A stretch of 64,000 nucleotides of DNA from Dendrobates tinctorius. Taxonomy: Eukaryota. A model generated the notes under the pieces. That model did not search any database. It was not told where the DNA came from and saw only the letters and a program-made list of their open reading frames with translations. The DNA lies in NCBI RefSeq assembly GCF_039654945.1, contig NW_027361759.1, forward strand, positions 3,224,001 through 3,288,000. The letters are read 5' to 3'. Both the position numbers and the translations under genes were made by a program. Numbering within the stretch: position 1 is the stretch's first letter; the number at the start of each line of letters is the position of its first letter. Shown piece by piece: positions 15,811 to 62,185 of the stretch.

Positions 15811-15830
15811 TTACACATCGTGGGGCCTTA

Positions 15831-20576: not shown

Positions 20577-21222
20577 GGCCCCGCCACACTAAGCGACTTA
20601 CCAGCGATCCCGACACCGATATCAAGGTGTCAGGATCGCTAGTAAGTCGCTATGTGATCGCTGGTGAGCTGTCACACAGACAGCTTCACCAGCGATCAGC
20701 ACAGCGATGCCGAGCGCCCGGCATCGCTTGCCATCCCTGTAAAAAATAGAATCAAAATAAAAAATATAGTTATTCTCACCTTCCGATGTCCCGTTCAGCC
20801 ATCCTGCCTCTCTCCACGCTCCGGTCCCAGTGATCCTTTGCGAGAATGACCGCGAGATGTCACGGTCTCGAGGGATAACAAAGTCTCGCGGTCATTCGTG
20901 CAAAGGATCACTGGGACCGGAGCGTGGAGAGAGGCAGGATGGCTGAACGGGACGTCGGAAGGTGAGAATAACTAGATTTTTTAAATTATTTTTTACACCT
21001 GATCGCTGGTCTCCCGCCTGTCACACACAGCGATGCGTGCTGGCCAGCGGGAGACCAGCGACCAAAGAAATATCCAGAGGTTTCTTCCAGCGATACCGGC
21101 AGGGGGGCCGCTCGCTGATCGCTGTCACACGTAGCGATCTCGCTGGTGAGATCGCTGTTACGTCACAAAAGTTGTGACTCAGCAGTGATCTCGCTACCGA
21201 GATCGCTTAGTGTGACGGGGCC
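20577..21222. mobile_element. Harbinger-type MITE nested in a Kolobok/T2-like MITE remnant (~20547-21515)
   Basis: GGCCCCGCCACACTAAGCGA / TCGCTTAGTGTGACGGGGCC termini; flanks CTA/TTA; internal hairpin at 20775-20967. Confidence 0.8.
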
Positions 21223-29461: not shown

Positions 29462-29590
29462 TAACAAGTTATGGTAAAAATAGCAGGATTATTGAGACTG
29501 TGATGTAATGTCAGTGTTTCCATATGGGAATTAACCCCTTCACATCCTTAGGATTTTTTGTTTTCTGCTCATTTTCTTCCCAGAGCCTTA

Positions 29591-30525: not shown

Positions 30526-31336
30526 TTAATGTTTTTATATTTTTCCTTCAATGTGTGGGCTTGTTTTTTGCAGGATGAGTTGTACTTTTGAATGACACCA
30601 TTGGTTTAACCATATATACTTTATTGTACTGGAAAACGGGAAAGAAATTGCAAAAAAAAGTGCAATTCAACAATTTTTTTATTTTTTTTTTACCATGTTC
30701 ACTAAATGCTAAAACTGACCTGCTATTATGATTCTCCGTGTCATTTTTTTTAAAGTAGTGTAAAAAAAAGCTCCAATTTCTGAGACCTGTTGCGTCTTCA
30801 TTTTTCCATTCTTCGGAATCTGGGGCTTATTTTTTTGCGCGCCGAGCTGACGTTTTTATTGATATCATTTTTTTTTTTTTTTAGATACGATGTATTGATC
30901 ACCTGTTAATGCATTTTAGACATTGCCTCAACCAAAAAAAGGTAATTCTGGTGGGGGGTTTTTAAAAAATGTTTTCACTTTTTTTGCACCATTTACATAT
31001 CAGATTAATTTAGCTTATATTTAGATAAATTGGACATTTCTGAACACATTCCCAAATGTGTATTTTTTTTTGTTTTGTGTTGGGCAAAAGGGGGGCGATT
31101 TGAACTTTTATTTTTTTAATTTTTTAAATATTTTTTCAAACATTATTTTTCTATTGTTTAACTTGCGTCGATAGTTTCCTTAGGAGTCTTGAAGCTGCGA
31201 TCATCTGAACGCTTGTGCTACACATTGTAGGGTATCAGACCATCTATAATATAATGCTAGGAGCGTCACTCTGTCCGAAGCCTTTATAGACTGCACAAGC
31301 GCGACATGCCTGCGCAGTCTGGACCCCACAGAGTAA

Positions 31337-32902: not shown

Positions 32903-34123
32903 CACTCACTGGCCACTTTATTAGGTACACCATGCTAGTAAGGGGTTGGACCCCCTTTTGCCTTCAGAACTGCCTCAATTCTTCGTGGCAGAGATTCACC
33001 AAGGTGCTGAAAGCATTCCTCAGAGATTTTGGACCATATTGACATGATGGCATCACACAGTTGGCGCAGATTTGTCGGCTGCACATCCCTGATGCAAATC
33101 TCCCGTTCCACCACATCCCAAAGATGCTCTATTGGATTGAGATCTGGTGACTGAGGAGGCCATTTGAGTACAGTAAACTCATTGTCATGTTCAAGAAACC
33201 AATCTGAGATGATTCGAGCTTTATGACATGGCGCATTATCCTGCTGAAAGTAGCCATCAGATGTTGGGTACATTGTGGTCATAAAGGGATGGACATGGTC
33301 AGCAACAATACTCAGGTAGGCTGTGGCGTTGCAACGATGCTCAATTGGTACCAAGGGGCCCAAAGAGTGCCCAGAAAAAATTCCCCACACCATGACACCA
33401 CCACCACCAGCCTGAACCGTTGATACAAGGCAGGATGGATCCATGCTTTCATGTTGTTTACGCCAAATTCTGACCCTACCATCCGAATGTCGCAGCAGAA
33501 ATCGAGACTCATCAGACCAGGCAACGTTTTTCCAATCTTCTACTGTCCAATTTCGATGAGCTTGTGCAAATTGTAGCCTCAGTTTCCTGTTCTTAGCTGA
33601 GAGGAGTGGTACCCAGTGTGGTCTTCTGCTGCTGTAGCCCATCTGCCTCAAAGTTCGACGCACTGTGCATTCAGAGATGCTCTTCTGCCTACCTTGGTTG
33701 TAACAGGTGGCAATTTGAGTCACTGTTGCCTTTCTATCAGCTCGAACCAGTCTGCCCATTCTCCTCTGACCTCTGGCATCAACATGGCATTTCCGGCCAC
33801 AGAACTGCCGCTCACTGTTTTTTTTTTCTTTTTCGGACCATTCTCTGTAAACCCTAGAGATGGTTGTGCGTGAAAATCCCAGTAGATCAGCAGTTTCTGA
33901 AATTCTCAGACCAGCCCTTCTGGCACCAACAATCATGCCACGTTCAAAGGCACTCAAATCACCTTTCTTCCCCATACTGATGCTCGGTTTGAACTGCAGG
34001 AGATTGTCTTGACCATGTCTACATGCCTAAATGCACTGAGTTGCCGCCATGTGATTGGCTGATTAGAAATTAAGTCTTAACACACAGTTGGACAGGTGTA
34101 CCTAATAAAGTGGCCAGTGAGTG
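32903..34123 (-). mobile_element. Full-length DD36E (Incomer-type) Tc1/mariner transposon, 1221 bp
   Basis: Perfect 29-bp TIRs CACTCACTGGCCACTTTATTAGGTACACC; TA TSD; intact ORF. Confidence 0.95.
32935..33975 (-). CDS. DD36E transposase, 346 aa
   Basis: [14 protein letters not shown] and SPDLNPIE; I count 36 residues between the second D and E. Confidence 0.95.
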
Positions 34124-34400: not shown

Positions 34401-34981
34401 TCTATATATAACATAAATGAACAACTCATATGAAAGCCGGCCAATGGCCAGCATTCATAGGAGATCTTCAGGTACAAGCACAGGGGTCTACTGCACACCC
34501 CCAGCCATCATGCCAATCCATCATCGCCCCCCGAGATCATGTGCGAGGGGTGCTAATGGGCGGGGTTTGTGACGCACTTCCGGTAAGCGCGAGTTAAATT
34601 ACTCTGTCAGAGATTGACAGCGTCATTTAATATGTTAACAGCCGCGGGTAGATCGCGATTCCACGCACAGCTGTTCCTGAAAATACTGGCACACGACCTA
34701 CGATGTCCCTATACATCACAGGTTGTGAAGGGGCTAAGGTTGGGGTGGGCTGGCATAGAAAAATCAAATTCCTGCTACTTGCACACCTCGAAGTCCTTTA
34801 TCATGCCTTTATTTCAAAATCCAAGAAGTATCATTTCTCCTTGCGGAGAATGACATGCTAAGCATGTCGAGACGAGGAGACTTAAAGCCGCAATGCTCCT
34901 CTGGGAAATATGCTAATTATGCAAATTGTCTCTTCAGAGAGGAAGAGGACTAGAACTCTAGTGCCACCTAGTGAATCTCAA

Positions 34982-35026
34982 TTTGCAGACACTGTATTTC
35001 GGGGTATTGCCCCTCGTCAGTGCAAA
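34982..35026 (-). ncRNA. Type I hammerhead ribozyme motif
   Basis: Minus strand reads TTTGCA-CTGACGA-GGGG-CAATA-CCCC-GAAA-TACAGTG-TC-TGCAAA. Confidence 0.8.
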
Positions 35027-35090
35027 GTGTGAGATCTGGTTTGGCTGTGAGAGAGGCGTCTGACCGATATCCAAGAAGTATAATTTCTCC

Positions 35091-35135
35091 TTTGCACTGA
35101 TGAGGGGCAGTACCCTGAAACACAGTGTCTGCAAA
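35091..35135 (+). ncRNA. Type I hammerhead ribozyme motif
   Basis: TTTGCA-CTGATGA-GGGG-CAGTA-CCCT-GAAA-CACAGTG-TC-TGCAAA, with a G-U pair at the base of stem II. Confidence 0.8.
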
Positions 35136-35164
35136 TTGAGATTCTGACTTGGCTTTTATCCTAA

Positions 35165-35530
35165 AGGCCCTTTTACATTTAGCGATGCACCAGCGATCCG
35201 ACCCGGTCAGGATCGCTGGTGCATCGCTAAATGATCGCTAGTGAGCTGTCACACAGGCAGACCTCACAGCGATGCAGCAGCGACACAGCACACGATACTC
35301 ACCTTCACACACAGCGATTCTGACGTCCTCCCGCCCGCCTCCACGCGTCGCTCGTCGTCACAGCAGGAAGCTGACGACGAGAAATGGAGCCGGACGTTCT
35401 CGCGCGATCAGCGATGGACAGCGGGGGAGCCGGTCGGAGGTAAGTATCACACATGGCGATATTGCTAGCGATATCGCTATATCGTCACAAAATCGGTGAC
35501 ATAGCGATATCGCTATGTGTAAAACCCCTT
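35165..35530. mobile_element. MITE inserted into the retrozyme-like element
   Basis: TAA duplicated at the insertion point (uninterrupted unit reads TTTTATCTTAAGTCATG at ~56790); TTTTACA..TAGCGAT / ATCGCTA.GTGTAAAA inverted ends. Confidence 0.8.
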
Positions 35531-36973
35531 TAAGTCATGTAACAAGGCTCGTTAAAGGGTCGACATTGACTTTTAGGATGGCTACTTCCAATAGTTGCCA
35601 TGAGAGTTCTAGTCCTCTTCCTCTCGAAAGAGACTATTTGCATAATTAGCTTATTTCAAAAGAGACAGCAGGGTTTGTAATGATCTGAAGATGTTATCTT
35701 TCAACTGGCAAAGCACAGAGTCTATAAAGTGTGCTTGTTTTCTGCACTAGGGAATGTGGACACATTTAAAGGGGGTTATCCAGGACTATTTTTTTTTTTT
35801 TTGCTGTAACTGCTGTAGCTGGTGTTGCTCTCCAGTGACATAGAACGGTCACTGACCGTTCCCTCCAGCACTTCAGCGGCTTCTCATCTGCTCTGCTCTG
35901 TTGATGAGGTGTCACTGCCTATGTCATGCTGATTGAGAGCCGGTTCTCCGCTGCATAACCGCGAGGAGCCAGATGTCAATCAGCATGATATTAGCAGTCA
36001 CGCCTCATTGGTACAGCAGCCCCAGAAAAAGAAGAGCTGCTCTATCAACGTACAGCAGCTGAATCACCCACAGGTGCGGTTGGTGACCACTCTGAGCTGG
36101 CATTGGGTAAAACAGGCAGGTAGTTGCTTCTGGTTGTCTGCCAGCACAGAATGACTGTTCAAACAAAATACAGGTGTTCGGTGCACCCTTGGCGTGGGCA
36201 AACATTTAAGTGCATTTTCCAATCTACAGTACTTGTCTTACCTCTATCCCCACATTTCTCTGGCTCTATAGAGCCAAATCTGCCAACCAAAGAAGAGGAG
36301 TTGGAGATAGAGATTAAAAAAAAAGTAGGTGGGAAGGCGCACTTAAATGTTTGGCTACTCCAAGGGTGCACCGAGCGCCATTAATAATTGTCGCATTCTA
36401 TGCTGACACTGCTTTTAAAGAAATTGGCTACGTTCTAGCCAAATTCCTAAGATGCACTAAACTGTTGTGTCTTATCACAAGGAACCATGAATATTCCCCA
36501 TCCAGTACATGCACTGATGCAGGAGATTCCGCAGCCTGTTTCTGCACCAGCGCAGAAATGGATCAAGACAGGAAAGCAGTCATGTTGTTATCTATTTTCA
36601 GTATTATTGGCAGAGGCATTGTTTCACCGCTGATCCATTGACAGCATTGTCCTTGAAACACAGGGCAGTGGTAAGCAATGGGAGTATGCATGACTGCTTA
36701 TGTCAGTATGCAAGAGTTTAGCGCATTTTGGACATCTGGCTAGCAAGTGACCTACCCATTTAATTTACAATTATTGGCCAGGATGCCTTCAATATATTTG
36801 TAGTGTGCTGCATCACATTCAGATTGCCTGTGCAGTGCACTGAAGAGGGACAATCACCCCGAAACAGACTGTAGATGAGTTTTTCCTTCTCTGGTCGCAA
36901 AGCTATTTAAAGGGAATCTGTTTACTAATCTGCAGGTAAATAGCCTTAAAACCCTGTGTAACCGGCTGACTTA

Positions 36974-37317: not shown

Positions 37318-38386
37318 TTAGTTCGGCTACACAGAGAAAATTACGTTTTGATCACGATGTTATCATTGTGTAGTGGCTCTCTCCTAATTATAGGAGTGCT
37401 GCGGGGACTGCTTACATCACAGCTCAGTACAGTGGGAGCGCAGCAGTAACCACTCCCCAGCACTAAGAGTGACAGTTCGCTCTGCCCACACACGTAGAGA
37501 GGATGTCATTCACAGTGCTTCTGGGAGAGAGGTTGCACTGTGATTAAAACATCATTTTCTATGTAGCAGCACTTCGTCAGCTGACTACACAGGGTGTTAA
37601 AGGCTGTTTATCCATAGATGAACTCTACATCTGCAGGTAAATAGCGTTTTTCTGATGGCAGGATCCCTTAGAGGGACAAACATTGACTTGTGTATTTGTG
37701 AGATCAGCTCTTGCAGGACAAAATAAATGAGGTGCATACTTTTCTCCCATTCTCTCTCAGCTGATCTCTTTTAGAAGAACAGTACTTACCTGTTGTGGCC
37801 AAGAAATGCACTAGGATGTAGGCTGGATTCAGATGAGCATAGCTCATGTTCCACATGTGGACTGTAATGCTTGGACTGACCACAGGTCTACTGATCCAAA
37901 CTCAAAGCCGCAAATGTACACGAGGCTGTAAATTCTGGTCGAGACAAGTGGCCAGTTTGGGCATCGCAGTCCATATATAACCCACCCCATTTCAACCCAG
38001 AATTGGTCCTTGACTAAAGACAAGTGACTAGTTTGGAGCTGTTCTCTGCATCGCTATAGTTGACAGGTCTCTGGATGTGTGTATACTTCCCAGCATCTGG
38101 AACAGCTGGGGACCACACCGGATTAGTCACATCTCTCCCTGGCCGACACTTCAAACTAAGTTTTTGTTTTTTTTCTGAAATACTCTGGCAATTGCACAGC
38201 CAGGTTCTGAAATGCCGCCTGTGGTTTGGCCAGCATGAATCAAGTGACAGATTCCTTTTAAGCTGTCATTATATATTGCCTGAAATCTATTTGATTTGTA
38301 GTAATATTTGATCTCTTCAAGCTAATTCTGCAATTGTCAAGTGATCACTCTAATCACTCTTTTCTTTGTGTCTATCAAGCATAGGA

Positions 38387-39406
38387 ATGTCAGACTCCGA
38401 GGGTATTAAGGAGCTGATCTTCAGAGCTTTACAAGTGGAGAGTCTTTTACACAACAGAATGTATGAAGAAATTGAATCCCATCTCTCTTTCTTTGAAGAA
38501 GCAAAGGTCAATTGTGCAAACCTACAGCAGACTGATGTCCTCAGAGTTGTGTACAGAGTACTTAAAAGCTGTCCGCCAGGAGCACTGAAAAAGAAAGCAA
38601 AGTGCTTACTCTCCAAGTGGAAACTCTTGTACAAAGACAGCTGTCTTCATACCTACACAGTTCAGGAGAAGTTTATGGGTGAACTAGAGAGGAATGACAA
38701 TGCAACTGTGACGCAAGCTCAAGACAGCGCACAAAACCTCACAGGTCTCGAGAGTACAAGTGGTCATTCCTCTACTGTGACTGAAGAACAAAATCTGGGG
38801 TCAAGCTCACAAGCGGTATGCAGTAAGGAGCACAGGGCAGGTACCCAAGATCAGCAGAAAATGAGTGTTGAGGGCTTGAGAAAGAAGTGCCGAGAACTTT
38901 TGTATCAGGCTTTAGCTGATCCTTCACAGTGCCATGAGAAAGCCCAGGAGTATACAAAGGAGCTTGAGGAAAGCATCTACATTCTGTATGCTGGGAATGA
39001 AAAGAAATACAGAAGCTGCATTCGTAGTAAAATTGCCAATCTGAAAAATCCTAAAAATATGCACTTGAAAACTCTCATTTATTCTGGAGCTCTGAACCCC
39101 AAAACATTTGCTGGAATGACTGCTCTGGAGATGGCAAGTGAGGATCTCCGAGGCCTCCGAGCTAGCTATACTCAGGCTGGTGTCCAGGAGCATCAGCTTC
39201 CCCAGCGCAATGATGGAGTCCAGACTAGGAAAATTAAATGTAGAAAATGTGAAAGGTTTAATTGCACAGTAACCATGATTTCCCGAGGGACACTCTTTCT
39301 GCCAGGCTGGGTACGTTCCGGGAACCCAGACGAAGAGATGATGACATTTGCCATTTGTAATGAATGCGGAGAACAGTGGTATCATAGCGGATGGATATGT
39401 CTGTGA
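38387..39406 (+). CDS. TCEANC: Transcription elongation factor A N-terminal and central domain-containing protein (single coding exon, 339 aa)
   Basis: Intact ORF from ATG at 38387, just after a pyrimidine tract and AG acceptor (38383-38384). N-terminal TFIIS-N-like region (LQQTDVLRVVYRVLKSCP..LKKKAKCLLSKWK), central domain (KKYRSCIRSKIANLKNPKN) and C-terminal Zn ribbon CRKC..RGTLFLPGWVRSGNPDEEMMTFAICNECGEQWYH match vertebrate TCEANC as I recall it. Confidence 0.95.
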   Translation: MSDSEGIKELIFRALQVESLLHNRMYEEIESHLSFFEEAKVNCANLQQTDVLRVVYRVLKSCPPGALKKKAKCLLSKWKLLYKDSCLHTYTVQEKFMGELERNDNATVTQAQDSAQNLTGLESTSGHSSTVTEEQNLGSSSQAVCSKEHRAGTQDQQKMSVEGLRKKCRELLYQALADPSQCHEKAQEYTKELEESIYILYAGNEKKYRSCIRSKIANLKNPKNMHLKTLIYSGALNPKTFAGMTALEMASEDLRGLRASYTQAGVQEHQLPQRNDGVQTRKIKCRKCERFNCTVTMISRGTLFLPGWVRSGNPDEEMMTFAICNECGEQWYHSGWICL

Positions 39407-43874: not shown

Positions 43875-44226
43875 AGTTCCCATAACTTTCGCCTTTTGAG
43901 GTTGTGGTCTCCATTTTTCTGGATTTTTTTGCTTTTGTTTCTGTAGAGGGCGCTGGCTACTAAATTTTGTGGCCGCATCCAGCCCACCTGCAGTTCCTGC
44001 CCCACGAGCGTCTTTTTTTCGCTCTTACTGCTTTGACTGCTTGTCAGTCCTTGTGTAGCTCCGTCATGTTATGTGAGGAGTAACTTGTTTCTCAGTTTTT
44101 CTTTAATTGTTATGTCATGTTATTTGTTGTTAGGTCTTGCCTGTTTGTACCGTTTCTTTCTGCAGGGTTAATACTCCAAAGGAAGCAGATTCTCGGCTAT
44201 CACAGCCACTTCTGGCCTTACATACC

Positions 44227-47200
44227 ATGGGTTTAAAGGTATTGTCTCTAAATGTAAAGGGATTAAATTCTCTGCATAAAAGGTCATGGGTCTGGAAGGA
44301 GGCAGGGAAGGCGAGTAGTGATGTTTTGTGCATTCAAGAATCACATTTATTAGCCCAGGATAATGGTAGAATGAAAAATGTTAATTATCCTCATCAGTTT
44401 TTTGACAATAATGTCCACAAAAGGGCGGGTGTGGGAATCCTCATTAAAAGCTCTGTAGCCTTCCAGCTTGAAAGGGTGGTAGGGGACATTGAGGGGAGAT
44501 ATGTCATTTTAATTGGTCTACTAAACAATGTGCAATTTACTATTGCTTCAGTGTATGCTCCCAATGTGGGCCAGTTGAGATTCATACGCAAATTTTTGGA
44601 GACTTTTAGGGGAATAGCAAAGGGTTCCTCGGTGATATGCGGAGACTTTAATGTCCCTATGTGTAAATTCCTAGATTGTTCTCACCAAGCCCCGGTCAGA
44701 AAAGAGATGAGCCACCTGATCCGTGAGTTTCGTTTTCATGATATATGGCGATATGCTCATGCAGGAGAGAGAGACTACTCTTTTCACTCCCTAAGGTTTA
44801 ATACCTACTCTAGAATAGATTATATCTTAGTAGATGATTCGTTACTGTTGGGTTGTGACCAGATTAACATTGGCCCCATTACGTGGTCGGACCACGCGCC
44901 CGTTATGTTAACAATTTCAGACGGGGGTCCTACCCGGTCTCCTTCCAAATGGAAACTGAATGATTATATCCTCACTAACCAAGATACCAGCGATGAAATC
45001 GCTCGGCAATTAAAAGAATTTTTTGCCATTAATGATAATCAAATGGTCTCGGATGAAATTCTTTGGGCGGCCCATAAGGCCTTTGCTAGAGGTGTCCTCA
45101 TCAAAATTGCAGCAATGGAGAAAAGGGAAAGGTTAAAAACATTTAATGATATTTTGTCTAAACTCCAGCTCCTGGAAAGGGCAAACAAGGCCCACCCCTC
45201 TGACATTTTCCTTGACTCTATTAGAGGTCTGAGAGATCAGATGAGATCAATTATGCTGTATTCCTATGAAAAAAATCTAAAAAAGCTTAAATCCAAATTC
45301 TATAGCTTGGGTGATAGAGCCGGTAGGGTCCTAGCAAGTCGAGTGAAGAAAAGGGAGGCTCGGATGGCCATTCCCTTTTTAATTAAGCACGACGGGTCCA
45401 AAGTTTTAAACCCTACTCATATAGCTAGTGAGTTTAAAGAATACTATTCCCAACTATATAATCTCAAGTCAGATCCTAAAACACACCAGCCCACGAAGGG
45501 TGAAATCTCTTCTTTCCTTGCTAAACTAAATTTGCCCAAACTTTCCCCCACGGCTCTGGCTGCTCTTAATGCCCCCCTTACTGAGGAGGAAGTAGTTCGG
45601 GTTATTAAATCTTCTAAGAGACTTTCTGCCCCTGGGCCAGATGGTTTTTCTAATTCTTACTACCGCCAGTTTGCGCACATCTTGGCTCCATTTTTGGTTA
45701 GAACGTTCTCACTATGGAGGGACTCATCTGATATCCAATCTGAAAGCTACAATCACTACTATTCCTAAACCGGGGAAGCCTCCAACCTCTCCTGGTAACT
45801 TCAGACCTATCTCTCTTTTGAATTGTGATGTGAAGTTACATGCAAAAGTCTGGGCTAATAGACTCCTCTCAGTTTTGCTGGCTCTGGTCTCCCCTGACCA
45901 AGTGGGATTTGTCCCAGGGAGGCAGGCTAGAGATGGCACTAGAAGAGTGATTGATTTGATGGATTTTCTTGAGTCCAGTGGTACCCCCGGTGTATTCCTG
46001 TCTCTAGATGCGGAAAAAGCGTTTGACAGGGTACATTGGGGCTATGTGGACGCTGTTTTGGACACATTTGGTTTCTATGGTAATATAAAGGGTGCTATTA
46101 TGGCCTTATACAAAAAAAAAAATGCTTTGGTCTGTGCAGCTGGCTTCTATTCTGATAGATTTGACCTGACTAATGGGACCCGCCAAGGTTGCCCCCTTTC
46201 CCCTATAATTTTTGCTTTAGTCATGGAGCCCCTGGCGGAGTCCATTAGGCTCAACCCGGAAATCTCTGGAGTTAAAATAGGCCCTGTAGAGCATAAGATC
46301 GGTCTATATGCAGACGATGTAATTCTCTCTTGCACTGATAGTGAAAGATCATTGATAGGGATCAAAAATGCTCTCCTTGAATTTTCTAAGATTTCATATT
46401 ACAAGCTAAACGAAGGAAAATCGGTTCTCTTCTCGGTTAATGTTCCACCATCTGTTAGAAATAGAATCTCCTCACTTGTCCTATATACTTGGGCCCTGGA
46501 CAGCTTCTCGTACCTAGGACTAAGGATTTGTAAACTTTCCAATATTGTCAAACAGAATTTTAATACTCTGCTTGATTCCATTCGAAAGGACATAGACAAT
46601 CAAATACATTTACCACTTTCCTGAATGGCGCGCATTCAGATAGTTAAGATGATGTTCTTACCAAAAATTATTTATTCCGTTGTCTTCCCTTGAGGTTCCC
46701 CAAGAGGTTTCTCTCTCTTCTGCAGGCAGTTGTGAGCAGATTTATTTGGGCAGGAAAGAAACCTAGGCTTAGTATGTCTACCTTATTTTATAGTTATTCA
46801 CATGGTGGTCTGGGGGTCCCGAATTTTTATTTGTACCATAAAGCAGCAGTTCTAGAGGCGTTAAGGGAGTGGTATGATGATTCTAGTACTCACAAATGGG
46901 TGCTTGTGGAGAAATGCTTGGCCCCGCGTGGGACTTTGAGATTTCTGCTGGAGGCCCGAGTGCTTGGTTCCTTTGCCCCCTCTCTTCCCTTGCAGACAAT
47001 GAAAGTGGCATTTTCTTACTGGTCTGATCTGGTCTCTTCTCGTCAGGTGATTAAATTTGAGTCTATCTCTATTAGAGCCCCGGAGCTTCATGTGGATGGC
47101 CTCACGTTAGGCAATTGGGTGAGGAATGGTATTGTCGTCATGAAAGATATCCTCTTAATTCAGGAGTTGAAATCTTTCTCTGTCCTAATGGATGAATTTG

Positions 47201-51474: not shown

Positions 51475-53080
51475 CAGTGGGGAAAAAAAGTATTTAGTCA
51501 GTCAGCAATAGTGCAAGTTCCACCACTTAAAAAGATGAGAGGCGTCTGTAATTTACATCATAGGTAGACCTCAACTATGGGAGACAAACTGAGAAAAAAA
51601 AATCCAGAAAATCACATTGTCTGTTTTTTTTTTATTTTATTTGCATATTATGGTGGAAAATAAGTATTTGGTCAGAAACAAGCAATCAAGATTTCTGGCT
51701 CTCACAGACCTGTAACTTCTTCTTTAAGAGTCTCCTCTTTCCTCCACTCATTACCTGTAGTAATGGCACCTGTTTAAACTTGTTATCAGTATATAAAGAC
51801 ACCTGTGCACACCCTCAAACAGTCTGACTCCAAACTCCACTATGGTGAAGACCAAAGAGCTGTCAAAGGACACCAGAAACAAAATTGTAGCCCTGCACCA
51901 GGCTAGGAAGACTGAATCTGCAATAGCCAACCAGCTTGGAGTGAAGAAATCAACTGTGGGAGCAATAATTAGAAAATGGAAGACATACAAGACCACTGAT
52001 AATCTCCCTCGATCTGGTGCTCCACGCAAAATCCCACCCCGTGGGGTCAGAATGATCACAAGAACGGTGAGCAAAAATCCGAGAACCACGCGGGGGGACC
52101 TAGTGAATGAACTGCAGAGAGCTGGGACCAATGTAACAAGGCCTACCATAAGTAACACACTACGCCACCATGGACTCAGATCCTGCAGTGCCAGACGTGT
52201 CCCACTGCTTAAGCCTGTACATGTCCGGGCCCGTCTGAAGTTTGCTAGAGAGCATTTGGATGATCCAGAGGAGTTTTGGGAGAATGTCCTATGGTCTGAT
52301 GAAACCAAACTGGAACTGTTTGGTAGAAACACAACTTGTCGTGTTTGGAGGAAAAAGAATACTGAGTTGCATCCATCAAACACCATACCTACTGTAAAGC
52401 ATGGTGGTGGAAACATCATGCTTTGGGGCTGTTTCTCTGCAAAGGGGCCAAGACGACTGATCCGGGTACATGAAAGAATGAATGGGGCCATGTATCGTGA
52501 GATTTTGAGTGCAAACCTCCTTCCATCAGCAAGGGCATTGAAGATGAAACGTGGCTGGGTCTTTCAACATGACAATGATCCAAAGCACACCGCCAGGGCA
52601 ACGAAGGAGTGGCTTCGTAAGAAGCATTTCAAGGTCCTGGAGTGGCCTAGCCAGTCTCCAGATCTCAACCCTATAGAAAACCTTTGGAGGGAGTTGAAAG
52701 TCCGTGTTGCCAAGCGAAAAGCCAAAAACATCACTGCTCTAGAGGAGATCTGCATGGAGGAATGGGCCAACATACCAACAACAGTGTGTGGCAACCTTGT
52801 GAAGACTTACAGAAAACGTTTGACCTCTGTCATTGCCAACAAAGGATATATCACAAAGTATTGAGATGAAATTTTGTTTCTGACCAAATACTTATTTTCC
52901 ACCATAATATGCAAATAAAATGAAAAAAAAACAGACAATGTGATTTTCTGGATTTTTTTTTTCTCAGTTTGTCTCCCATAGTTGAGGTCTACCTATGATG
53001 TAAATTACAGACGCCTCTCATCTTTTTAAGTGGTGGAACTTGCACTATTGCTGACTGACTAAATACTTTTTTCCCCACTG
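51475..53080 (+). mobile_element. Full-length Tc1 (DD34E) transposon, copy 2
   Basis: Same TIRs and TA TSD as copy 1. Confidence 0.97.
51842..52864 (+). CDS. Tc1 transposase, 340 aa, DD34E
   Basis: Intact; differs from copy 1 at 5 residues. Confidence 0.96.
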
Positions 53081-55066: not shown

Positions 55067-55565
55067 TTAAGCATAAAGTGAGTTCCGGAAGTGATAACAT
55101 GTTCCCTGCAGAGCCCTGATGTCAATAAATCTGAGAAAAAGGAAACTTGGCACTCAGGAAATTGATGAGATGAAGATATTTTTAATAAGGAATCCCAAAA
55201 AGAAAAATGTAAAAATGTTTTGGCCTGTGTTAGACCTTCATCAATGTACTACATGGAAACAGATTTTTTTTTTTTTTTACAATATAGCAAACATCAGCAT
55301 AAATATATAATGTCACCTGATAAATCTTTTGTAAGGTGCCCAGGACTGTGCTGTAGTCATTGTTGAGGGGCTGCATTTCCACGCTCTGGCACCCCACAAA
55401 TCAACGGTGTCCCAGTCCCTTAGTGTCACACTGTGTACAGTGCAATTTACTCACCTTCAGTCCAGAGGCCTCCGCTGCATCCACGTCCTTTGGCCCAGCA
55501 ACAGCCGCACAAAAATCACGGGACACTCACTTCTTATCAAACATTCCAACTTTACTTAACAGTCA

Positions 55566-56483
55566 GGCTGCGTTCACACATTCAGGTTTTTTAGCGTTTT
55601 CGCAGCGGTTTTTACGGCAAAAAAAGCATCCCATGCATTCCTATGGGATTACGCAATGCTGTGTTAATGCTGCGGATTTTCCCGCAGCGGAATCGTATCG
55701 CGGAAAAATCAGCAGCATGCTCATTAATTTGCGGAATCGCGGCGATTCCGCCCACACAGGAATGGATTGTTCTGCTTACTTTCCGCATGTGGCTGTGCCC
55801 ACCATGCGAAAAGTAAGCAGAACATTTGCGGATGGTACCCACGGTCCGGAGGAGAGGAGACTGTCCTTCAGGCTCTGGGTACCATATCCCTGTAAAAAAT
55901 AGAAATAAAATCGGGTTATATTCACCTTCCGACGTCCCGCGCAGCGTCCCCAGTCTTCAGCGATACACGCCGTAGCTCCCGTTCCCAGTAATGCATTGCG
56001 ATGACCTTTGCTGACATCTCGTCTCGCGATGCTATAGCGGTCTCGCGACGTCATCAAAGGTCATTGCCGCAATGCATCACTGGGAACGGGATCGGCCGTA
56101 CCATCGCGGAGGCCTGGGGACGCTGCGCGGTACGTCGGATGGTGAATATAACCCTTTTTTTTTTTTTTTTTTAATTTATTTATTATTTTTAACATTAGAT
56201 CTTTTTACTACCGATGCTGCATAGGCAGCCTCAATAGTAAAAAGTTGGTCACACTCGTCAAACACTATGTTTGACGAGTGTGACCAACCTGTCAATCAGT
56301 TCTCCAAGCGATGATACAGATCGCTCGGAAAACGCTAGTATTCTGCAAGATAAAAACGCTTGCAAAACGCTAGTTTTTCAGCGAGAAAATCGCGGGTATT
56401 TAAAATGCGATTTTCTCGCGGAATGGAATTCCGGAATTCTCGCGGTAACTTCCGCGGGAGTTCCGCAACGTGTGAACTTAGCC
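55566..56483 (-). mobile_element. Harbinger-type MITE family 1 (inverted copy)
   Basis: Reverse complement of 29591-30525; TCA TSD. Confidence 0.88.
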
Positions 56484-56496
56484 TCAGAGTTCAACC

Positions 56497-56907
56497 GTTA
56501 AAGTGTCGACATTGACTTTTAGGATTGCTGCTTCCTATAGGTGTAACTAGGGTTCTAGCCCTCTTCCTCTCTGAAGAGACAATTTGCATATTTCCCAGAG
56601 GAGCATTGTGGCTTTAAGTCTTCTCATCTCGGCATGCTTATCATGTCATTCTCCGCAAGGAGAAATGATACTTCTTGGATATCGGTCAGACGCCTCTCAC
56701 ACAGCCAAACCAGATCTCACACTTTGCACTGACGAGGGGCAGTACCCCGAAACACAGTGTCTGCAAATTGAGATTCTGGTTTGGCTTTTATCTTAAGTCA
56801 TGTAACCAGGCTTGTTAAAGTGTCAACATTGACTTTTAGGATTGCTACTTCCAATAGGTGGCACTAGAGTTCTAGTCCTCTTCCTCTCTGAAGAGACAAT
56901 TTGCATA
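56497..56907 (+). mobile_element. Retrozyme/satellite-2-like tandem repeat, 317-bp unit x 1.3
   Basis: The first ~93 bp recur 317 bp later (octamer at 56582 and 56899); non-coding; contains a complete hammerhead. Confidence 0.85.
56703..56786 (+). ncRNA. Type I hammerhead ribozyme with extended stem I
   Basis: Core CTGACGA (56729-35), stem II GGGG/CCCC, GAAA (56749-52), short stem III, GTC cleavage triplet (after 56761); stem I TTTGCA/TGCAAA extended by ATCTCA/TGAGAT and AGCCAAACCAG/CTGGTTTGGCT. Confidence 0.9.
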
Positions 56908-56939
56908 GTTCATCTGATGTTACAGAACAGTACGATTCC

Positions 56940-57522
56940 GTGCTCTCCGTTAATTTTTAAGCCTGAGCTATCCCTTCGCTTACTGGTTCCTTCAGCCCTC
57001 AGGCTACTCCGTTTGGCTCCACAGTACTCACAAGACCCGACCCATCTCCCTAACATGTTTTCCCGTCCGTCTTCCACTTGTTGGCAGAGAACAAGACACG
57101 CTTCACAGTGCCTAGTTTGGACCGTAGGCTGCGAACATGACAGGAATGTCTGCTGAAGACAGTCACCGACAATCTCATGCTGCCAAAGCAATTCTCACTT
57201 CTCGTGCCCGCCAGCCCTCTGGCTTTAAACTCTTTCCCACATGCTTTATGCTTCTATCAGCCCTCTACATCTGTACTGTTGCACACTTAACATTATGGCT
57301 GGTCCATACAATCAGGGCAATTGTTACCACCCACCTTTCGTGTCTACCTCTTTCCTCATAGACTGTAAGCTTGCGAGCAGGGCCCTCATTCCTCTTGGCA
57401 TCTGTTATGATCTATGTGATTATTGTTATGCTGTAATGTCTATCATCTGTACAAGTCCCCTCTGAAATGTAAAGTGCTGTGGAGTATGTCGGCGCTATAG
57501 AAATAAAATTTATTATTATTAT
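56940..57522 (+). mobile_element. 3' end of an L2/CR1-clade LINE
   Basis: TAGACTGTAAGCT..GAGCAGGG, GTAAAGTGCTG..GGCGCTATAGAAATAAA and an (ATT)n tail. Confidence 0.65.
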
Positions 57523-57630
57523 AGTTAATATAAGTATCACTCATATGGAAAGAGGAAAGGAGATGCTCAACCATTAAAGGTCACACAATAAAGGACGGGC
57601 AGATAACATGAGGCATGCGGGGAGAATAAA

Positions 57631-57674
57631 CGGACGACAGCCGTTTCGCGTACACAGACACTTCAACAGGTCCG
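57631..57674 (-). ncRNA. Minimal variant hammerhead in the PLE pseudo-LTR
   Basis: CGGAC-CTGTTGA-AGTGT..ACGC-GAAA-CGGCTG-TC-GTCCG; core is CTGTTGA rather than CTGANGA. Confidence 0.6.
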
Positions 57675-57881
57675 GGTGTGTAATTACATGATGTCATTTC
57701 CTTAAATAGGTCTATGACTAACAACAAGTGAACATTTAAAATCATGAAAAAACATTTTCAATTAAAAACAAGTAGCATAATTACATCTTCAAGCTGACTG
57801 AGAAACAGATCACAACGAGTTATTTTCTTTTTATCTTTTCAAAAAATCTTTTTACAATAAAGTAAAAATATAAGAAATTCC

Positions 57882-59455
57882 TTACAAAAAGATAGACAAA
57901 TCCAACCTATCATTCAGTCCTATTGGACCCTGCGCGTTTGATTTAATTATCCATCTGGCTTCGTGTCTCATCAAGAGTTTATTATGATTACCACCTTGTG
58001 GTGGAAATTTTACAATTTCTAAACCAGCAAAGCGTAATAATTCAGGGTTGGAATTGTGTTTTTCTGGCATATGTTTTATCAAGCGCAAAGACCCTTTTCC
58101 TGTGCTAATGGAATGATAATGTTCGTGAAATCGTGTTGCAAGTGGTCTAATAGTTTTTCCTATGTAAAAAAATAAACAAGGACAAAACAAAATATATACC
58201 ACAAATTTACTTTTACAAGAAATAAAATCTTTTACCCAATGCTGAACGGGTCCGATTTTTAGAGGATTGGAAGTCATATGTAAATGACAGTAATTACAAT
58301 TACCGCATTTAAAATTCCCCTTTGGTGAATTTTTTTGTAACCAGTTTTTGTCAAGAGGGAGCAAACGATTGTGTACTAAAAGATCAGCTATGTTATGAGT
58401 GCGTTTATATGCAAATTGCGGAGCCATAGCACTAATTTCCTGCAAATCTTTATCGGAGCGCAAAACATGCCAATTTTTTCTGATGGCTGTGTGTTTAATC
58501 CTATCGGTGGAACTATGTTTGAAGCTAAAGAAAAATCTCTTGTGAATTTATTTCATAATTCATTTGTTTTTTTATGGCGTTTGGTGACGCTTTTTAATAA
58601 ATCACTTTGTGAAATGGTTTTGACTCGTTCGTTAGCTTCATTTAAAACACCAATAGGATAACCTCTCCTCAACAAACGTATTTTTAATTCCTCAATTTGT
58701 TTATTACATATGTCATCGTTATTGTTCAGTTTCCTTAATCTAACCATCTGGCTAAAGGGAAGCCCTTTTTTAGTTGTGCATGGGGTGTGCACTGTTGAAA
58801 TGTAGGAGTGAATTAGTCGCGGTTGGTTTTCTATGTACCCTGATGATCATATTACCATCTACAATATCGATTTTTATATCCAAAAATTCTGTTTTTCTGC
58901 CCGAAGCAAGAAGTAAATCGCATATTTTCCACATTCATTTCGTTTAGATATTGAACAAAGTTGTTACAATCATTCTGAGAACCGTCCCATATGATGAAAA
59001 TATCATCCACGAATCTCAGAAAGATGCGGATGTGCTTTAAGAAGGGATTGGATATATTTGTAATATATTTTTATTCAAACGTTGCTAGAAACAAATTAGC
59101 AAAAACACATGCTACGGGCGTTCCCATAGCAGTACCAATTTTCTGAAGATACCATTGGTTCAAAAATTTAAACATGAGATAGTACAAAATCCAATCCGTC
59201 CAAATTGAAAGCAATCCAATCAAGACTCTTATCAGAATTCATCAAAATTTTATGGATTGCCTCAATAGCATTTTTTTGAGGAATCCGTGTATAAAGATTC
59301 ACTACATCGATTGTGGTTAAAGAAAAACTTGACTGCCAATCGAAGTTTTTTAAAATAGAGATAAAATCACCTGAATCTTTTACATAAGAAGGAATCTGGG
59401 AAAGTAATGGTTTGAGAAGCCAGTCTAAATATTGTGATAACGGTTCTGTCAATGA
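57882..59455 (-). pseudogene. PLE RT and GIY-YIG endonuclease, left arm, disrupted
   Basis: ORF fragments 59168-59455, 58553-58792 and 57882-58463. Confidence 0.9.
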
Positions 59456-59461
59456 ATTAAT

Positions 59462-60890
59462 GTAGTGAATCTTTATACACGTATTCCTCAAAAAAATGCT
59501 ATTGAGGCAATCCATAAAATTTTGATGAATTCTGATAAGAGTCTTGATTGGATTGCTTTCATTTTGGACGGATTGGATTTTGTACTATCTCACAACGCGT
59601 TTAAATTTTTGAACCAATGGTATCTTCAGAAAATTGGTACTGCTATGGGGACGCCCGTAGCATGTGTTTTTGCTAATTTGTTTCTAGCAGCGTTTGAAGA
59701 AAAATATATTACAAATATATCCAATCCCTTCTTAAAGCACATCCGCATCTTTCTGAGATTCGTGGATGATATTTTCATCATATGGGACGGTTCTCAGAAT
59801 GATTGTAACAACTTTGTTCAATATCTAAACGAAATGAATGTGGAAAATATGTGATTTACTTCTTGCTTTGGGCAGAAAAACATAGAATTTTTGGATGTAA
59901 AAATCGATATTGTAGATGGTAATATGATCATCAGGGTACATAGAAAACCAACCGCGACTAATTCACTCCTACATTTTTACAGTGCACACCCCATGCACAA
60001 CTAAAAAAGGGCTTCCCTTTAGCCAGATGGTTAGATTAAGGAAACTGAACAATAACGATGACATATGTAATAAACAAATTGAGGAATTAAAAATACGTTT
60101 GTTGAGGAGAGGTTATCCTATTGGTGTTTTAAATGAAGCTCACGAACGGGTCAAAACCATTTCACAAAGTGATTTATTAAAAAGGGTCACCAAACGCCAT
60201 AAAAAACAAATGAATAATTAAATAAATTCACAAGAGATTTTTCTTTAGCTTCAAACATAGTTCCATCGGTAGGATTAAACACACAGCCATCAGAAAAAAT
60301 TGGCATGTTTTGCGCTCCGATAAAGATTTGCAGGAAATTAGTGCTATGGCTCCGCAATTTGCATATAAATGCACTCATAACATAGCTGAGCTTTTAGTAC
60401 ACAGTCGTTTGCTCCCTCTTGACAAAAATTGGTTACGAAAAAATTCACCAAAAGGGAATTTTAAATGCGGTAATTGTAATTACTGTCATTTACATATGAC
60501 TTCCAATCCTCTAAAAATCGGACCCGTTCAGCATTGGGTAAAAGATTTTATTTCTTGTAAAAGTAAATTTGTGGTATATATTTTGTTTTGTCCTTGTTTA
60601 TTTTTTACATAGGAAAAACTATTAGACCACTTGCAACACGATTTCGCGAACACTATCATTCCATTAGCACAGGAAAAGGGTCTTTGCGCTTGATAAAACA
60701 TATGCCAGAAAAACACAACTCCAACCCTGAATTATTACGCTTTGCTGGTTTAGAAATTGTAAAATTTCCACCACAAGGTGGTAATCATCATAAACTCTTG
60801 ATGAGACACGAAGCCAGATGGATAATTAACTCAAAAGCGCAGGGTCCAATAGGACTGAATGATAGGTTGGATTTGTCTATCTTTTTGTAA
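59462..60890 (+). pseudogene. PLE RT and GIY-YIG endonuclease, right arm, disrupted
   Basis: ORF fragments 59465-59854, 59982-60221, 60310-60612 and 60588-60890. Confidence 0.9.
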
Positions 60891-61098
60891 GGAATTTCTT
60901 ATATTTTTACTTTATTGTAAAAAGATTTTTTTGAAAAGATAAAAAGAAAATAACTCGTTGTGATCTGTTTCTCAGTCAGCTTGAAGATGTAATTATGTTA
61001 CTTGTTTTTAATTCAAAATGTTTTTTCATGATTTTAAATGTTCACTTGTTGTTAGTCATAGACCTATTTAAGGAAATGACATCATGTAATTACACACC

Positions 61099-61142
61099 CG
61101 GACCTGTTGAAGCGTCTGTGTACGCAAAACGGCTGTCGTCCG
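61099..61142 (+). ncRNA. Minimal variant hammerhead in the PLE pseudo-LTR, GAAA mutated to AAAA
   Basis: Same motif as 57631-57674 but with G12 lost. Confidence 0.5.
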
Positions 61143-62185
61143 TTTATTCTCCCCGCATGCCTCATGTTATCTGCTCGTCCTTTATTGTGTGACCTTTAAT
61201 GGTTGAATAAAGAAAGACTGCACTGCAAATTGGGTGAGTGCCGCATCTCCTTTCCTCTGTCCATATATCTTACATGTTTTTTCTGATGCAGAGCGCCGTT
61301 ATCCCTAGCAGCGTGCTGCATACTGTGTGCCCTTGATTGATCCTGGACTAGTTGCTGGTGGATTGATGCCTTGGTGCCGTTCACCTGTGTTTTTTCTGAA
61401 TTGAATAAGTATCACTCAATCTAATCTCCAACTGATGTAACCAGGAAGTGCTCCCCTTTTTATATTCTCCTTCCCCCTCTCATGCTGGGCTGATCCCAAA
61501 CATATTAACTGTATCTCTTCCTGCAGTCTGTTGCTGGGACAATCTAACCTTTCACCTACATTCCGGCACCCAGCTTGCATTACTTTTCTACATTAACACT
61601 ATACTAACAATACTTATACCATACCTATCACTTATACACCAATAGGCGCCCAATGCCTATCTGCCTTAATGTTCCAACTCCTGAGCTGAGTGTACCAGGT
61701 TCCCTTAATCATTACCAATACAGTACCACATAGCAGCATCAGTACTTAAAACACTCTCTACTTTTTTCATTATACCATCAAAGCACAATACAATCGCATG
61801 TTAATATTCACACTACAATTGTTGTCTAAAGGGGACGGTTTATGACTGTCCCTGTTACACCCTTACTTTTATCATACTCAAAAGATGCAAAAAATAACAT
61901 ACTGGCATCATATAATCCTAACATATTATATGAAGGGGATTTAACACAAGATCCAAATGTATGTCAGATAGTCTGTAATAAGGAAAACGAGCACCTTAGA
62001 ATAATACTGAATAAGACTGAGAGTGTGGTTGTTGAGAATGACAGAGTGGCAGAAAAAAACCTAAGAGGCTGCACAAAAGAGACATACCAGATTGCAAGTT
62101 TCTTTAAGAGACAGAAATTTGCAGTGAGAAAGCGCTGAACATGACTTCCATTGCTTGTTCCAGGCAAGAGCAGAGACGGGTAGGG

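What the first reader, a model, noticed from the sequence alone, without database searches (positions are those of the whole stretch)
56497..56907. Frog satellite-2/retrozyme-like 317-bp unit with a complete type I hammerhead ribozyme
Seen: a non-coding 317-bp unit in 1.3 tandem copies with all hammerhead core nucleotides (CUGACGA, GAAA, GUC), a 4-bp stem II, a very short stem III and a ~23-bp bulged stem I. Two more copies of the ribozyme sit at 35 kb, so this is a dispersed family. Known: newt satellite 2 and metazoan non-LTR retrozymes are tandem repeats of this size with type I hammerheads that process multimers into monomeric or circular RNAs; short stem III hammerheads tend to cleave as dimers. 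Inference: this is an anuran retrozyme family, possibly undescribed in this lineage.
Basis: partly seen in the sequence, partly recalled or inferred. Interest (0 to 1): 0.9.

Follow-up and report, generated by a model that had tools for sequence, protein, structure and literature searches.

The report
Frog hammerhead retrozyme, single worn copy
This is one old, non-coding 415-base copy of an abundant frog jumping repeat that carries a small self-cutting (hammerhead) RNA motif; repeats of this kind are already described in salamanders and clawed frogs, so it is a clean but ordinary example.

Summary
Window 56497-56911 is 1.3 head-to-tail copies of a 317-bp non-coding unit. It carries one complete type I hammerhead at 56723-56767: core CUGACGA/GAAA/GUC, 6-bp proximal helix I extended to 23 bp, 4-bp helix II, 2-3-bp palindromic helix III, predicted cut after C56761. 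Two more copies sit at 35 kb.

Rfam Hammerhead_1 matches full-length but below its gathering score (25.5 vs 34 bits). A descriptor scan finds 3 hammerheads against 0.017 expected.

The best reading is a dispersed "monomer" copy of a non-LTR retrozyme, a non-autonomous relative of Penelope-like elements (PLEs). The ribozyme is the canonical metazoan type, very like axolotl HHR_Amex2, not the minimal type of PLE terminal repeats. The 35-kb sibling is a two-armed insertion with an 11-bp AT-rich target duplication. Both plus-strand copies end at the same unit position, beside a hairpin and an ATTTGCAT octamer.

With one ribozyme, this locus cannot release a unit-length RNA. Poly(A) RNA reads from a related species gave no pile of ends at the cut site and no circle evidence.

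Retrozymes are already reported in Xenopus and all seven amphibians sampled (bioRxiv 10.64898/2026.07.22.740005). This scan has noted the same kind many times elsewhere in this genome, including a ~317-nt unit. It is a new member of a known kind, of low interest.

The parts
56497..56813 (+). One full 317-bp non-coding repeat unit
   Evidence: 317-bp spacing of the terminal direct repeat. blastn and nhmmer self-hits. No ORF longer than 73 codons in a dimer; GC 44.8%.
56814..56911 (+). Partial second unit (first 98 nt of the unit, 92% identical to 56497-56594). Its right end is the 3' junction of the insertion.
   Evidence: Similarity to the unit stops at about 56906-56911, right after the octamer.
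56723..56767 (+). Type I hammerhead ribozyme core with proximal 6-bp helix I, 4-bp helix II and 2-3-bp palindromic helix III
   Evidence: Rfam Hammerhead_1 model positions 1-45/45, 25.5 bits, E 1e-4 on a 101-nt stretch, below gathering score 34. Descriptor hit. Shuffle control.
56703..56786 (+). Extended hammerhead: helix I continued to 23 bp (6+5+12) with a 3/1-nt internal loop at the usual place of loop 1
   Evidence: Fold. The active fold with extended stem I is -35.2 kcal/mol; the MFE is -39.1 kcal/mol.
56761..56762 (+). Predicted self-cleavage site (after C17 = C56761)
   Evidence: Read from the GUC triplet in the Rfam alignment. Not supported by read ends (table 6: none).
56561..56589 (+). 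Hairpin CTCTTC/GAAGAG (56561-56566 / 56573-56578) followed by octamer ATTTGCAT (56582-56589). The same hairpin and octamer recur at 56878-56906, directly at the 3' junction.
   Evidence: Sequence. Octamer positions. The hairpin appears in the circular fold. This stretch has the highest contig depth of the family (table 2).
34820..35650 (.). Sibling insertion of the same family. Minus arm 34820-35092 (unit 161-280, then 42-184). Plus arm 35090-35164 and 35531-35650 (unit 226-317, then 1 to about 100), interrupted by a MITE-like insertion at 35165-35530. Flanked by an 11-bp direct repeat TTATTTCAAAA at 34809-34819 and 35651-35661.
   Evidence: The target duplication was read.

Best explanation
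The stretch 56497-56911 is one old insertion, 1.3 units long, of a non-coding retroelement family of the 'non-LTR retrozyme' class. Its 317-nt unit carries a canonical metazoan type I hammerhead.

At family level (inferred from the known biology of the class): multimeric sense transcripts fold two neighbouring ribozymes into a double hammerhead through the palindromic helix III. [quoted passage not shown] A host tRNA ligase can then circularise these RNAs.

New copies are made by the reverse transcriptase/endonuclease of Penelope-like elements acting in trans. The endonuclease nicks an AT-rich target. cDNA synthesis starts at a fixed place of the unit, just after a hairpin and an ATTTGCAT octamer about 145 nt downstream of the cut site. 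It runs for more than one unit on a circular or uncut multimeric template and is often 5'-truncated or two-armed.

This particular copy crosses an uncut or religated cleavage site and has a single ribozyme. It cannot release a unit-length RNA on its own and is most likely an inert relic.

Shown here: the anatomy, the family relationship of the three copies, the target duplication and two-armed form of the sibling, and the shared 3' end. Inferred: cleavage, circles and the PLE enzyme.
For: 1. Complete hammerhead with canonical proportions. Helix I is 6 bp, helix II 4 bp, helix III short and palindromic. This matches the definition of canonical metazoan HHRs in PMC4209133. The count is 3 observed against 0.017 expected.

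2. The helix III segment self-pairs as 4+4 bp around an A.A mismatch at -8.4 kcal/mol. The single-motif active fold is 3.9 kcal/mol worse than the MFE. This is the behaviour described for newt and axolotl motifs that cut as dimers (PMC7229834; PMC7761336).

3. By eye the motif is very close to the axolotl Ax353 ribozyme printed in the supplement of PMC7229834. It shares loop 2 CAnUA and GAAACAC(A)GUGU, and helix II differs by paired changes.

4. The unit length of 317 bp, GC below 50% and the lack of an ORF fit the class.

5. The sibling at 35 kb has two head-to-head arms and an 11-bp AT-rich target duplication. An AT-rich target and extension of both DNA strands are properties of a PLE enzyme in vitro (PMC11167929).

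6. The two plus-strand copies end within about 7 nt of each other in unit coordinates, at 56906-56911 and 35650. PLE insertions likewise end at an internal reverse-transcription start site roughly 85-92 nt downstream of their hammerhead cut.

7. A PLE (RT plus GIY-YIG-like C-terminus) lies 630 bp away, so the presumed helper class is present in this genome.

8. The family is abundant and widespread. 31-mers of the unit are held in runs of seven organism labels and 11 studies. 1450 contigs of one run lie on it, with the deepest cover just upstream of the 3' junction.

9. Among the three window copies, the hammerhead/stem I part is 93-97% identical and the rest 84-88%. Only 3 of the 35 listed variable places fall in the 84-nt extended hammerhead, all in loops (table 3). 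This table is truncated, so the point is suggestive only.
Against: - No direct sign of cleavage or circles. In three poly(A) RNA-seq runs of a related organism there is no pile of read starts or ends at 56761/56762.
- Cover there is low on both strands and similar to that of the neighbouring unrelated TE.
- The strong peak at 56757-56907 comes from diverged copies inside other transcripts, mostly in the orientation expected for antisense RNA.
- Rfam's curated threshold is not reached.
- This copy has no convincing target duplication. The only candidate is an imperfect 9-mer, AGTTCAACC at 56488-56496 against AGTTCATCT at 56907-56915 (7 of 9, read).
- The shared 3' end rests on two insertions only.
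- The minus arm of the sibling ends at a different unit position (about 184).
- The circular monomer is only moderately structured (z -2.9, 60% paired).
- The link to a particular PLE is not shown. The neighbouring PLE fold-back has no similarity to the unit and no hammerhead.
Confidence: 0.8

Rival explanations
1. It is simply the terminal repeat (pseudo-LTR) of an autonomous Penelope-like element left by a severely 5'-truncated insertion, not a separate non-autonomous family.
For: PLE insertions are mostly 5'-truncated and keep one terminal repeat with a hammerhead. In Xenopus, 24 of 57 retrozyme families match PLE termini in Repbase. A PLE lies 630 bp away.
Against: The repeat period is 317 bp, so the template had units of 317 nt with no ORF between them. 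The ribozyme is the canonical type (helix I 6 bp, helix II 4 bp, loops present). PLE pLTRs are described as carrying the minimal type, with helix II 7-8 bp, helix I 4-5 bp and no helix III. The neighbouring PLE shares no sequence with the unit and is in a separate fold-back. Repbase and Dfam could not be searched here.
Confidence: 0.1
2. It is a broken-off piece of a tandem satellite array that was moved or left behind by DNA-level events (unequal crossover, segmental duplication), with no retrotransposition involved.
For: Newt satellite 2 and retrozyme multimers form long arrays. This copy lacks a clear target duplication.
Against: The sibling copy has an exact 11-bp target duplication and inverted arms. 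Both plus-strand copies share the 3' end. There is no array in 64 kb.
Confidence: 0.05
3. The hammerhead at this locus has been taken over by the host, for example to process or regulate an overlapping transcript, as proposed for the conserved intronic hammerheads of amniotes.
For: The core is intact although the flanking repeat parts have drifted by 8%. Amniote intronic hammerheads resemble Xenopus repeat hammerheads (PMC3088659).
Against: No host gene or exon was recognised around it; the neighbourhood is a pile of transposons. There is no excess of reads and there are no read ends at the site. Three copies in one window all keep the core, so an intact core is the family norm.
Confidence: 0.03

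Closest known systems
Axolotl non-LTR retrozymes Rtz353/Rtz331 (HHR_Amex2/HHR_Amex1), Cervera and de la Pena 2020, PMC7229834
   Same: Non-coding unit of about 330-350 nt against 317 nt here. Canonical type I hammerhead with weak palindromic helix III that needs a dimer. By eye the Ax353 motif shares loop 2 CAnUA and GAAACAC(A)GUGU with the frog motif.
   Different: The axolotl units form long arrays with about 120,000 motifs, and circular RNAs were shown by northern blot and RT-PCR. Here there is a single 1.3-mer, and RNA circles were not shown.
Newt satellite 2 (Epstein and Gall 1987; extended hammerhead, Pabon-Pena et al. 1991; as reviewed in PMC6155905)
   Same: Repeat of about 330 bp. Hammerhead that cuts as a double hammerhead or as an 'extended' single motif with an internally looped longer helix I. 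The frog motif also has a 23-bp looped helix I. An octamer in the unit recalls the snRNA-type promoter reported for satellite 2 (cited in PMC2220036).
   Different: The newt element is a satellite in long arrays with mapped transcripts. The promoter parallel here rests on one octamer motif and was not tested. The original papers were not held.
Xenopus non-LTR retrozymes incl. REP4_XT (Li, Clavereau and Pollet 2026, bioRxiv 10.64898/2026.07.22.740005)
   Same: Anuran host. Mean amphibian consensus length 316 bp. Monomer, dimer and multimer copies, with monomers dispersed along chromosomes. Proposed origin from PLE terminal repeats.
   Different: A different frog lineage, and most probably a different sequence family.
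Hammerheads of Penelope-like element terminal repeats (Cervera and de la Pena 2014, PMC4209133; Frangieh et al. 2024, PMC11167929)
   Same: Type I hammerhead on the sense strand upstream of the insertion's 3' end. Partial-tandem insertions. AT-rich targets. Two-armed copies. A fixed internal start of reverse transcription.
   Different: PLE motifs are minimal (long helix II, short helix I, no helix III), and the unit is a 3-5 kb coding element. Here the motif is canonical and the unit is 317 nt without an ORF.

Membership tests
Hammerhead ribozyme, type I (Rfam RF00163) | Conserved core CUGANGA ... GAAA ... UH with three helices, open end in helix I | tested here: met
   All core positions are present. 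Helix I is 6 bp (extended to 23), helix II 4 bp, helix III 2-3 bp.
Hammerhead ribozyme, type I (Rfam RF00163) | Score at or above Rfam's gathering threshold (34 bits) | tested here: not met
   25.5 bits, E 1e-4 on a 101-nt stretch, with a full-length model match. Nothing in the whole-window search or the 601-nt search. The shortfall comes from the one-base insertion in helix III and the loops, not from the core.
Hammerhead ribozyme, type I (Rfam RF00163) | Self-cleavage after position 17 | not testable with these tools
   No pile of read ends at 56761/56762 in poly(A) RNA of a related organism. That is not informative either way.
Canonical metazoan type I HHR (as against PLE minimal HHR) | Helix I 6 bp and helix II 4 bp with loops able to interact; helix III 1-2 bp with a small palindromic loop (PMC4209133) | tested here: met
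   UUUGCA/UGCAAA, GGGG/CCCC with loop CAGUA, an internal loop after 6 bp of helix I, and ACAC-A-GUGU. The loop-loop contact itself was not tested.
Non-LTR retrozyme | Tandem non-coding units of about 170-400 bp (51-972 bp in vertebrates), GC below 50%, no LTR/PBS/PPT | tested here: met
   317-bp unit, 1.3 copies, GC 44.8%, longest frame 73 codons.
Non-LTR retrozyme | At least two consecutive units, each with a complete hammerhead (criterion for an active element) | tested here: not met
   There is one hammerhead at this locus. The 35-kb sibling has two, but on opposite strands. So this is a 'monomer' derivative of the family, not an active element.
Non-LTR retrozyme | Expression as unit-length linear and circular RNA | tested here: inconclusive
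   The poly(A) RNA-seq runs are from another organism label. They show low two-strand cover and no circle-specific signal. The tandem reference cannot separate circles from multimers.
Non-LTR retrozyme | Insertion by reverse transcription (target duplication longer than 4 bp when present) and co-occurrence with PLEs | tested here: met
   The sibling copy has an 11-bp target duplication. A PLE with RT and a GIY-YIG-like domain lies in the same window. For the 56-kb copy itself, the target duplication is not convincing.
Autonomous Penelope-like element (pLTR) | Terminal repeat flanking an RT + GIY-YIG ORF | tested here: not met
   There is no ORF between the repeated parts; the period is 317 bp. 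The only PLE in the window is not similar to the unit.

The most novel reading that the evidence does not exclude
The insertions of this family carry the signature of the Penelope enzyme's internal start of reverse transcription. This is a fixed 3' end just after a conserved hairpin and octamer, about 145 nt downstream of the hammerhead cut, with an AT-rich target and two-armed products. If so, a non-coding retrozyme is recognised in trans through a short RNA signal and copied from uncut multimeric RNA. Neither cleavage nor circles would then be needed for its spread. The indel hot spot right after the octamer would be the scar where units are joined head to tail.
Probability: 0.3. Interest if true: 0.45.

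Novelty: new member of a known kind. Interest (0 to 1): 0.2.

Why it matters
As a single locus it matters little. It adds one more well-preserved example to a class already described in salamanders and clawed frogs, and this scan has noted it repeatedly in this genome.

Its modest value is as a data point for an open question: what mobilises animal retrozymes? Two independent copies in one window share a 3' end beside a hairpin and an octamer. One of them has the two-armed, AT-rich-target form of Penelope insertions.

A genome-wide census of ends in this repeat-rich frog could turn the proposed retrozyme-PLE partnership into a testable rule. It could also show whether the hammerhead is needed for spread at all.

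Tried and rejected
- Rfam at the gathering threshold on the whole window, and at E up to 10 on 601 nt, gave no hammerhead. Only the 101-nt search, with laxer filters, showed it.
- TRF found no array.
- Exact-pattern scans of metagenome contigs (two patterns) and viral contigs for more copies found nothing.
- Reads: no start or end pile at the cut site. The strong peak at 56757-56907 comes from diverged copies in other transcripts. One such copy begins about 3 nt after the predicted cut, which is suggestive of a cDNA run-off on a cleaved RNA but is a single case. Run X15 has very deep cover but an unknown library type, so I did not use it as expression evidence.
- Asymmetry of the 8 differences between the two 98-nt repeat parts: about 6 are private to the first copy and 2 to the second. 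I considered this as a sign of a heterogeneous template and rejected it as not significant.
- Target duplication for the 56-kb copy: only an imperfect 9-mer (7 of 9), and it overlaps the end of the neighbouring TIR element. I do not claim it.
- I looked for a link between the unit and the neighbouring PLE fold-back and found none.
- Pfam did not recognise the GIY-YIG part of that PLE. Only the Atlas feature search did.
- The papers on the newt satellite 2 promoter and extended hammerhead, and on PLE dimer hammerheads, are not held.
- The supplement of the 2026 preprint holds no sequences.
- I left out an alignment of the frog unit with the axolotl Ax353/Ax330 sequences printed in a supplement, because those letters have no reference here. 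The comparison is by eye and limited to the ribozyme.

Full report
**What is there**

The window holds no N. At 56497-56911 a 98-nt stretch occurs twice, at 56497-56594 and 56814-56911. The two copies are 92% identical and exactly 317 bp apart. blastn and nhmmer of the unit against the window give the same picture. The locus is therefore 1.3 head-to-tail copies of a 317-bp unit, 415 bp in all. TRF reports no array because there are fewer than two copies. The unit has no reading frame longer than 73 codons even when doubled, and its GC content is 44.8%.

**The ribozyme**

The plus strand reads UUUGCA-CUGACGA-GGGG-CAGUA-CCCC-GAAA-CACAGUGUC-UGCAAA at 56723-56767.
- Every conserved hammerhead core position is present.
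- Helix II is 4 bp.
- Helix III is A-U and C-G, possibly with a third A-U pair, closing a 3-5-nt loop inside the palindrome ACAC-A-GUGU.
- The predicted cut is after C56761.
- Helix I has 6 proximal base pairs, then a 3/1-nt internal loop, then 5+12 further pairs, making 23 bp over 56703-56786.

Rfam's Hammerhead_1 model aligns over all 45 positions, but at 25.5 bits, below the curated 34. It was only reported when a 101-nt stretch was searched (E 1e-4). The whole-window search and a 601-nt search returned nothing.

A descriptor of my own requires the core, at least 3 bp in helix II, at least 2 bp in helix III and at least 4 bp in helix I. It finds exactly three sites in the window, against a mean of 0.017 in 60 dinucleotide shuffles. 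The other two sites are at 35020-34988 (minus) and 35097-35129 (plus). Each has two changes at tolerated positions: N7, a G.U pair in helix II, loop 2, or a U.G pair at 15.2-16.2.

**How the motif is likely to behave**

With the hammerhead pairs enforced, the extended motif folds at -35.2 kcal/mol. The unconstrained optimum is -39.1 kcal/mol and pairs part of the core (ACUG) with the helix III loop. The helix III segment pairs with a second copy of itself as 4+4 bp around an A.A mismatch, at -8.4 kcal/mol.

This is the pattern described for newt, axolotl and other amphibian type I hammerheads. They are weak as single motifs and efficient as dimers (PMC7229834; PMC7761336; PMC6155905).

The proportions match the published definition of canonical metazoan hammerheads: helix I 6 bp, helix II 4 bp, short palindromic helix III. 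They differ from the minimal motifs of Penelope terminal repeats, which have helix II of 7-8 bp, helix I of 4-5 bp and no helix III (PMC4209133).

By eye, the axolotl Ax353 ribozyme printed in a supplement reads CUGAUGA-UGCC-CACUA-GGCU-GAAACACGUGUA. It has the same loop 2 pattern and the same helix III palindrome. Its helix II differs by paired changes.

**The family and how it moves**

The copy at 35 kb is informative. Read, it consists of three parts:
- a minus-strand arm at 34820-35092 (unit 161-280, then 42-184, with 78 nt missing between them);
- a plus-strand arm starting at 35090 (unit 226 onward, through the unit junction, to about unit position 100 at 35650);
- a later MITE-like insertion at 35165-35530 within the plus arm.

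The whole is flanked by an exact 11-bp direct repeat, TTATTTCAAAA, at 34809-34819 and 35651-35661. That is an insertion with a target duplication in AT-rich DNA and two head-to-head arms.

The plus arm ends at ...ATTTGCATAATTAGC. The 56-kb copy ends at ...ATTTGCATAGTTC. So two independent insertions stop within about 7 nt of each other in unit coordinates. They stop directly after a CTCTTC/GAAGAG hairpin and an ATTTGCAT octamer, some 145 nt downstream of the ribozyme's cut site.

A purified Penelope-like enzyme from a lizard has matching properties (PMC11167929). It nicks AT-rich DNA and extends both strands. It starts reverse transcription at a fixed internal site roughly 85-92 nt downstream of its own hammerhead cut. 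That start site explains the common end of genomic PLE copies, and ribozyme activity is not needed for insertion in vitro.

The parallel is close. I take it as the best available account of how this family spreads, although it rests on only two 3' ends, and the minus arm of the sibling ends elsewhere (about unit position 184).

A Penelope-like element is present 630 bp to the right, as a 5'-truncated fold-back with arms at 57567-59312 and 59455-61206. It has a weak RVT_1 match and a C-terminal part whose nearest Atlas clusters are eukaryotic GIY-YIG proteins. It has no similarity to the unit and no hammerhead. It shows that the helper class is in this genome, not that it is the helper.

**Is it just a Penelope terminal repeat?**

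A severely truncated autonomous PLE would leave less than one terminal repeat, or repeats several kilobases apart. Here the period is 317 bp with no ORF, and the ribozyme is of the canonical rather than the minimal type. I therefore rate that rival at about 0.1.

The distinction is partly semantic. [quoted passage not shown] Repbase and Dfam could not be searched here.

**State of this copy**

The insertion runs across the cut site, so its template was either uncut multimeric RNA or a religated circle copied for 1.3 turns. The present data cannot tell which. The two 98-nt parts differ at 8 places. About six of these are private to the first part and two to the second, which is not a significant asymmetry.

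There is no convincing target duplication, only AGTTCAACC against AGTTCATCT (7 of 9). The left flank is the end of an unrelated TIR element at about 55562-56487, which has copies at 29587-30533 and 14970-15814.

With a single ribozyme, the locus cannot release a unit-length RNA. By the criterion of the 2026 preprint it is a monomer derivative, not an active retrozyme.

**RNA and distribution**

Sampled 31-mers of the stretch are held in runs of seven coded organism labels from 11 studies. None of these holder runs is on record as RNA.

I laid three raw poly(A) RNA-seq runs of one of those organisms, plus one contig set of unknown type, on 56400-57000 at 90% likeness.
- The unit has low cover on both strands, similar to the neighbouring unrelated TE.
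- There is no pile of molecule ends at 56761/56762.
- There are no read-level joints in the RNA runs.
- A strong peak at 56757-56907 comes from diverged copies embedded in other transcripts, mostly in the orientation expected for antisense RNA.
- One such copy begins about 3 nt after the predicted cut, behind unrelated sequence. This would fit a cDNA that ran off a cleaved RNA, but it is one case.

The contig set shows 1450 pieces on the stretch, with the deepest cover just upstream of the 3' junction. That fits many 5'-truncated copies. However, depth summed over contigs of an unknown library is weak evidence.

Poly(A) selection, a different species and the tandem reference all limit this test. 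It neither supports nor refutes cleavage or circles. The circular monomer is moderately structured: -92.9 kcal/mol, z -2.9, 60% paired.

**Signs of constraint**

Among the three window copies, the part with the hammerhead and stem I is 93-97% identical, and the rest is 84-88% identical. Thirty-five variable places are listed in the read table within the element. Only three fall in the 84-nt extended hammerhead, and all three are in loops (table 3). That table is truncated, so this is suggestive only.

**Comparison and novelty**

The closest known things are:
- axolotl Rtz353/Rtz331 and newt satellite 2, which share the ribozyme type, unit size and dimer logic;
- the Xenopus non-LTR retrozymes, including REP4_XT;
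- more distantly, the hammerheads of PLE terminal repeats.

Repeat-associated hammerheads in Xenopus were noted in 2011 (PMC3088659). Retrozymes were found in all seven amphibians sampled in 2026, with a mean consensus length of 316 bp.

The scan's own notes list dozens of hammerhead-retrozyme findings on other pieces of this genome. They include units of 257, 266, about 317, 325, 352/353 and 394 nt. I treat those notes as leads, not as support. This is therefore a new member of a known kind: a clean, well-preserved, probably inert copy.

The only part with some wider interest is the shared 3' end and the two-armed sibling. These bear on the open question of which enzyme mobilises animal retrozymes and whether the ribozyme is needed for it.

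Noticed in passing
window 57567-59312 and 59455-61206: 5'-truncated Penelope-like element as a near-perfect fold-back (arms 96-98% complementary). It has RT and GIY-YIG-like ORF pieces on both arms, no hammerhead inside, and no similarity to the 317-bp unit.
   Followed up: partly
window 35165-35530: MITE-like insertion with terminal inverted repeats (TAAAGGnnnTTTTACA...TAGCGAT) inside the plus arm of the 35-kb retrozyme copy. A related piece lies at 20629-20701.
   Followed up: partly
window 56589-56594, 56906-56911, 35643-35650, 34912-34920: Indel hot spot directly after the octamer ATTTGCAT. The variants are GCAT-ATTTCCC, GCAT-AATTAGC(A/T)T-ATTTCCC and, in reads of other organisms, GCATA-TTTA-ATTTCCC. 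This is also where insertions end, so it may mark the place where units are joined.
   Followed up: partly
window 56757-56907 (reads of organism C): Poly(A) RNA reads from a diverged family copy that begins at about 56765, 3 nt after the predicted hammerhead cut, behind unrelated sequence (77 and 49 reads in two runs). Mostly first-mate-on-plus, so probably antisense read-through of a host transcript.
   Followed up: no
window 38366-39406 (+): Uninterrupted 346-codon frame with TFIIS central domain, Med26-type helical bundle and TFIIS zinc ribbon. It looks like an intronless TFIIS/TCEA-like gene or retrocopy among transposons.
   Followed up: no
window 55562-56487, 29587-30533, 14970-15814: Three copies (78-80% identical) of a TIR element of about 930 bp, with ends of the form AGGCTnnGTTCACAC. 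One abuts the retrozyme copy 9 bp from its left end.
   Followed up: partly
window 26464-27486, 51842-52864, 32935-33975, 44137-46624: Tc1/mariner (Sleeping Beauty-like) transposase ORFs in three places, and a LINE with APE endonuclease and RT domains. The window is largely a pile of transposons.
   Followed up: partly
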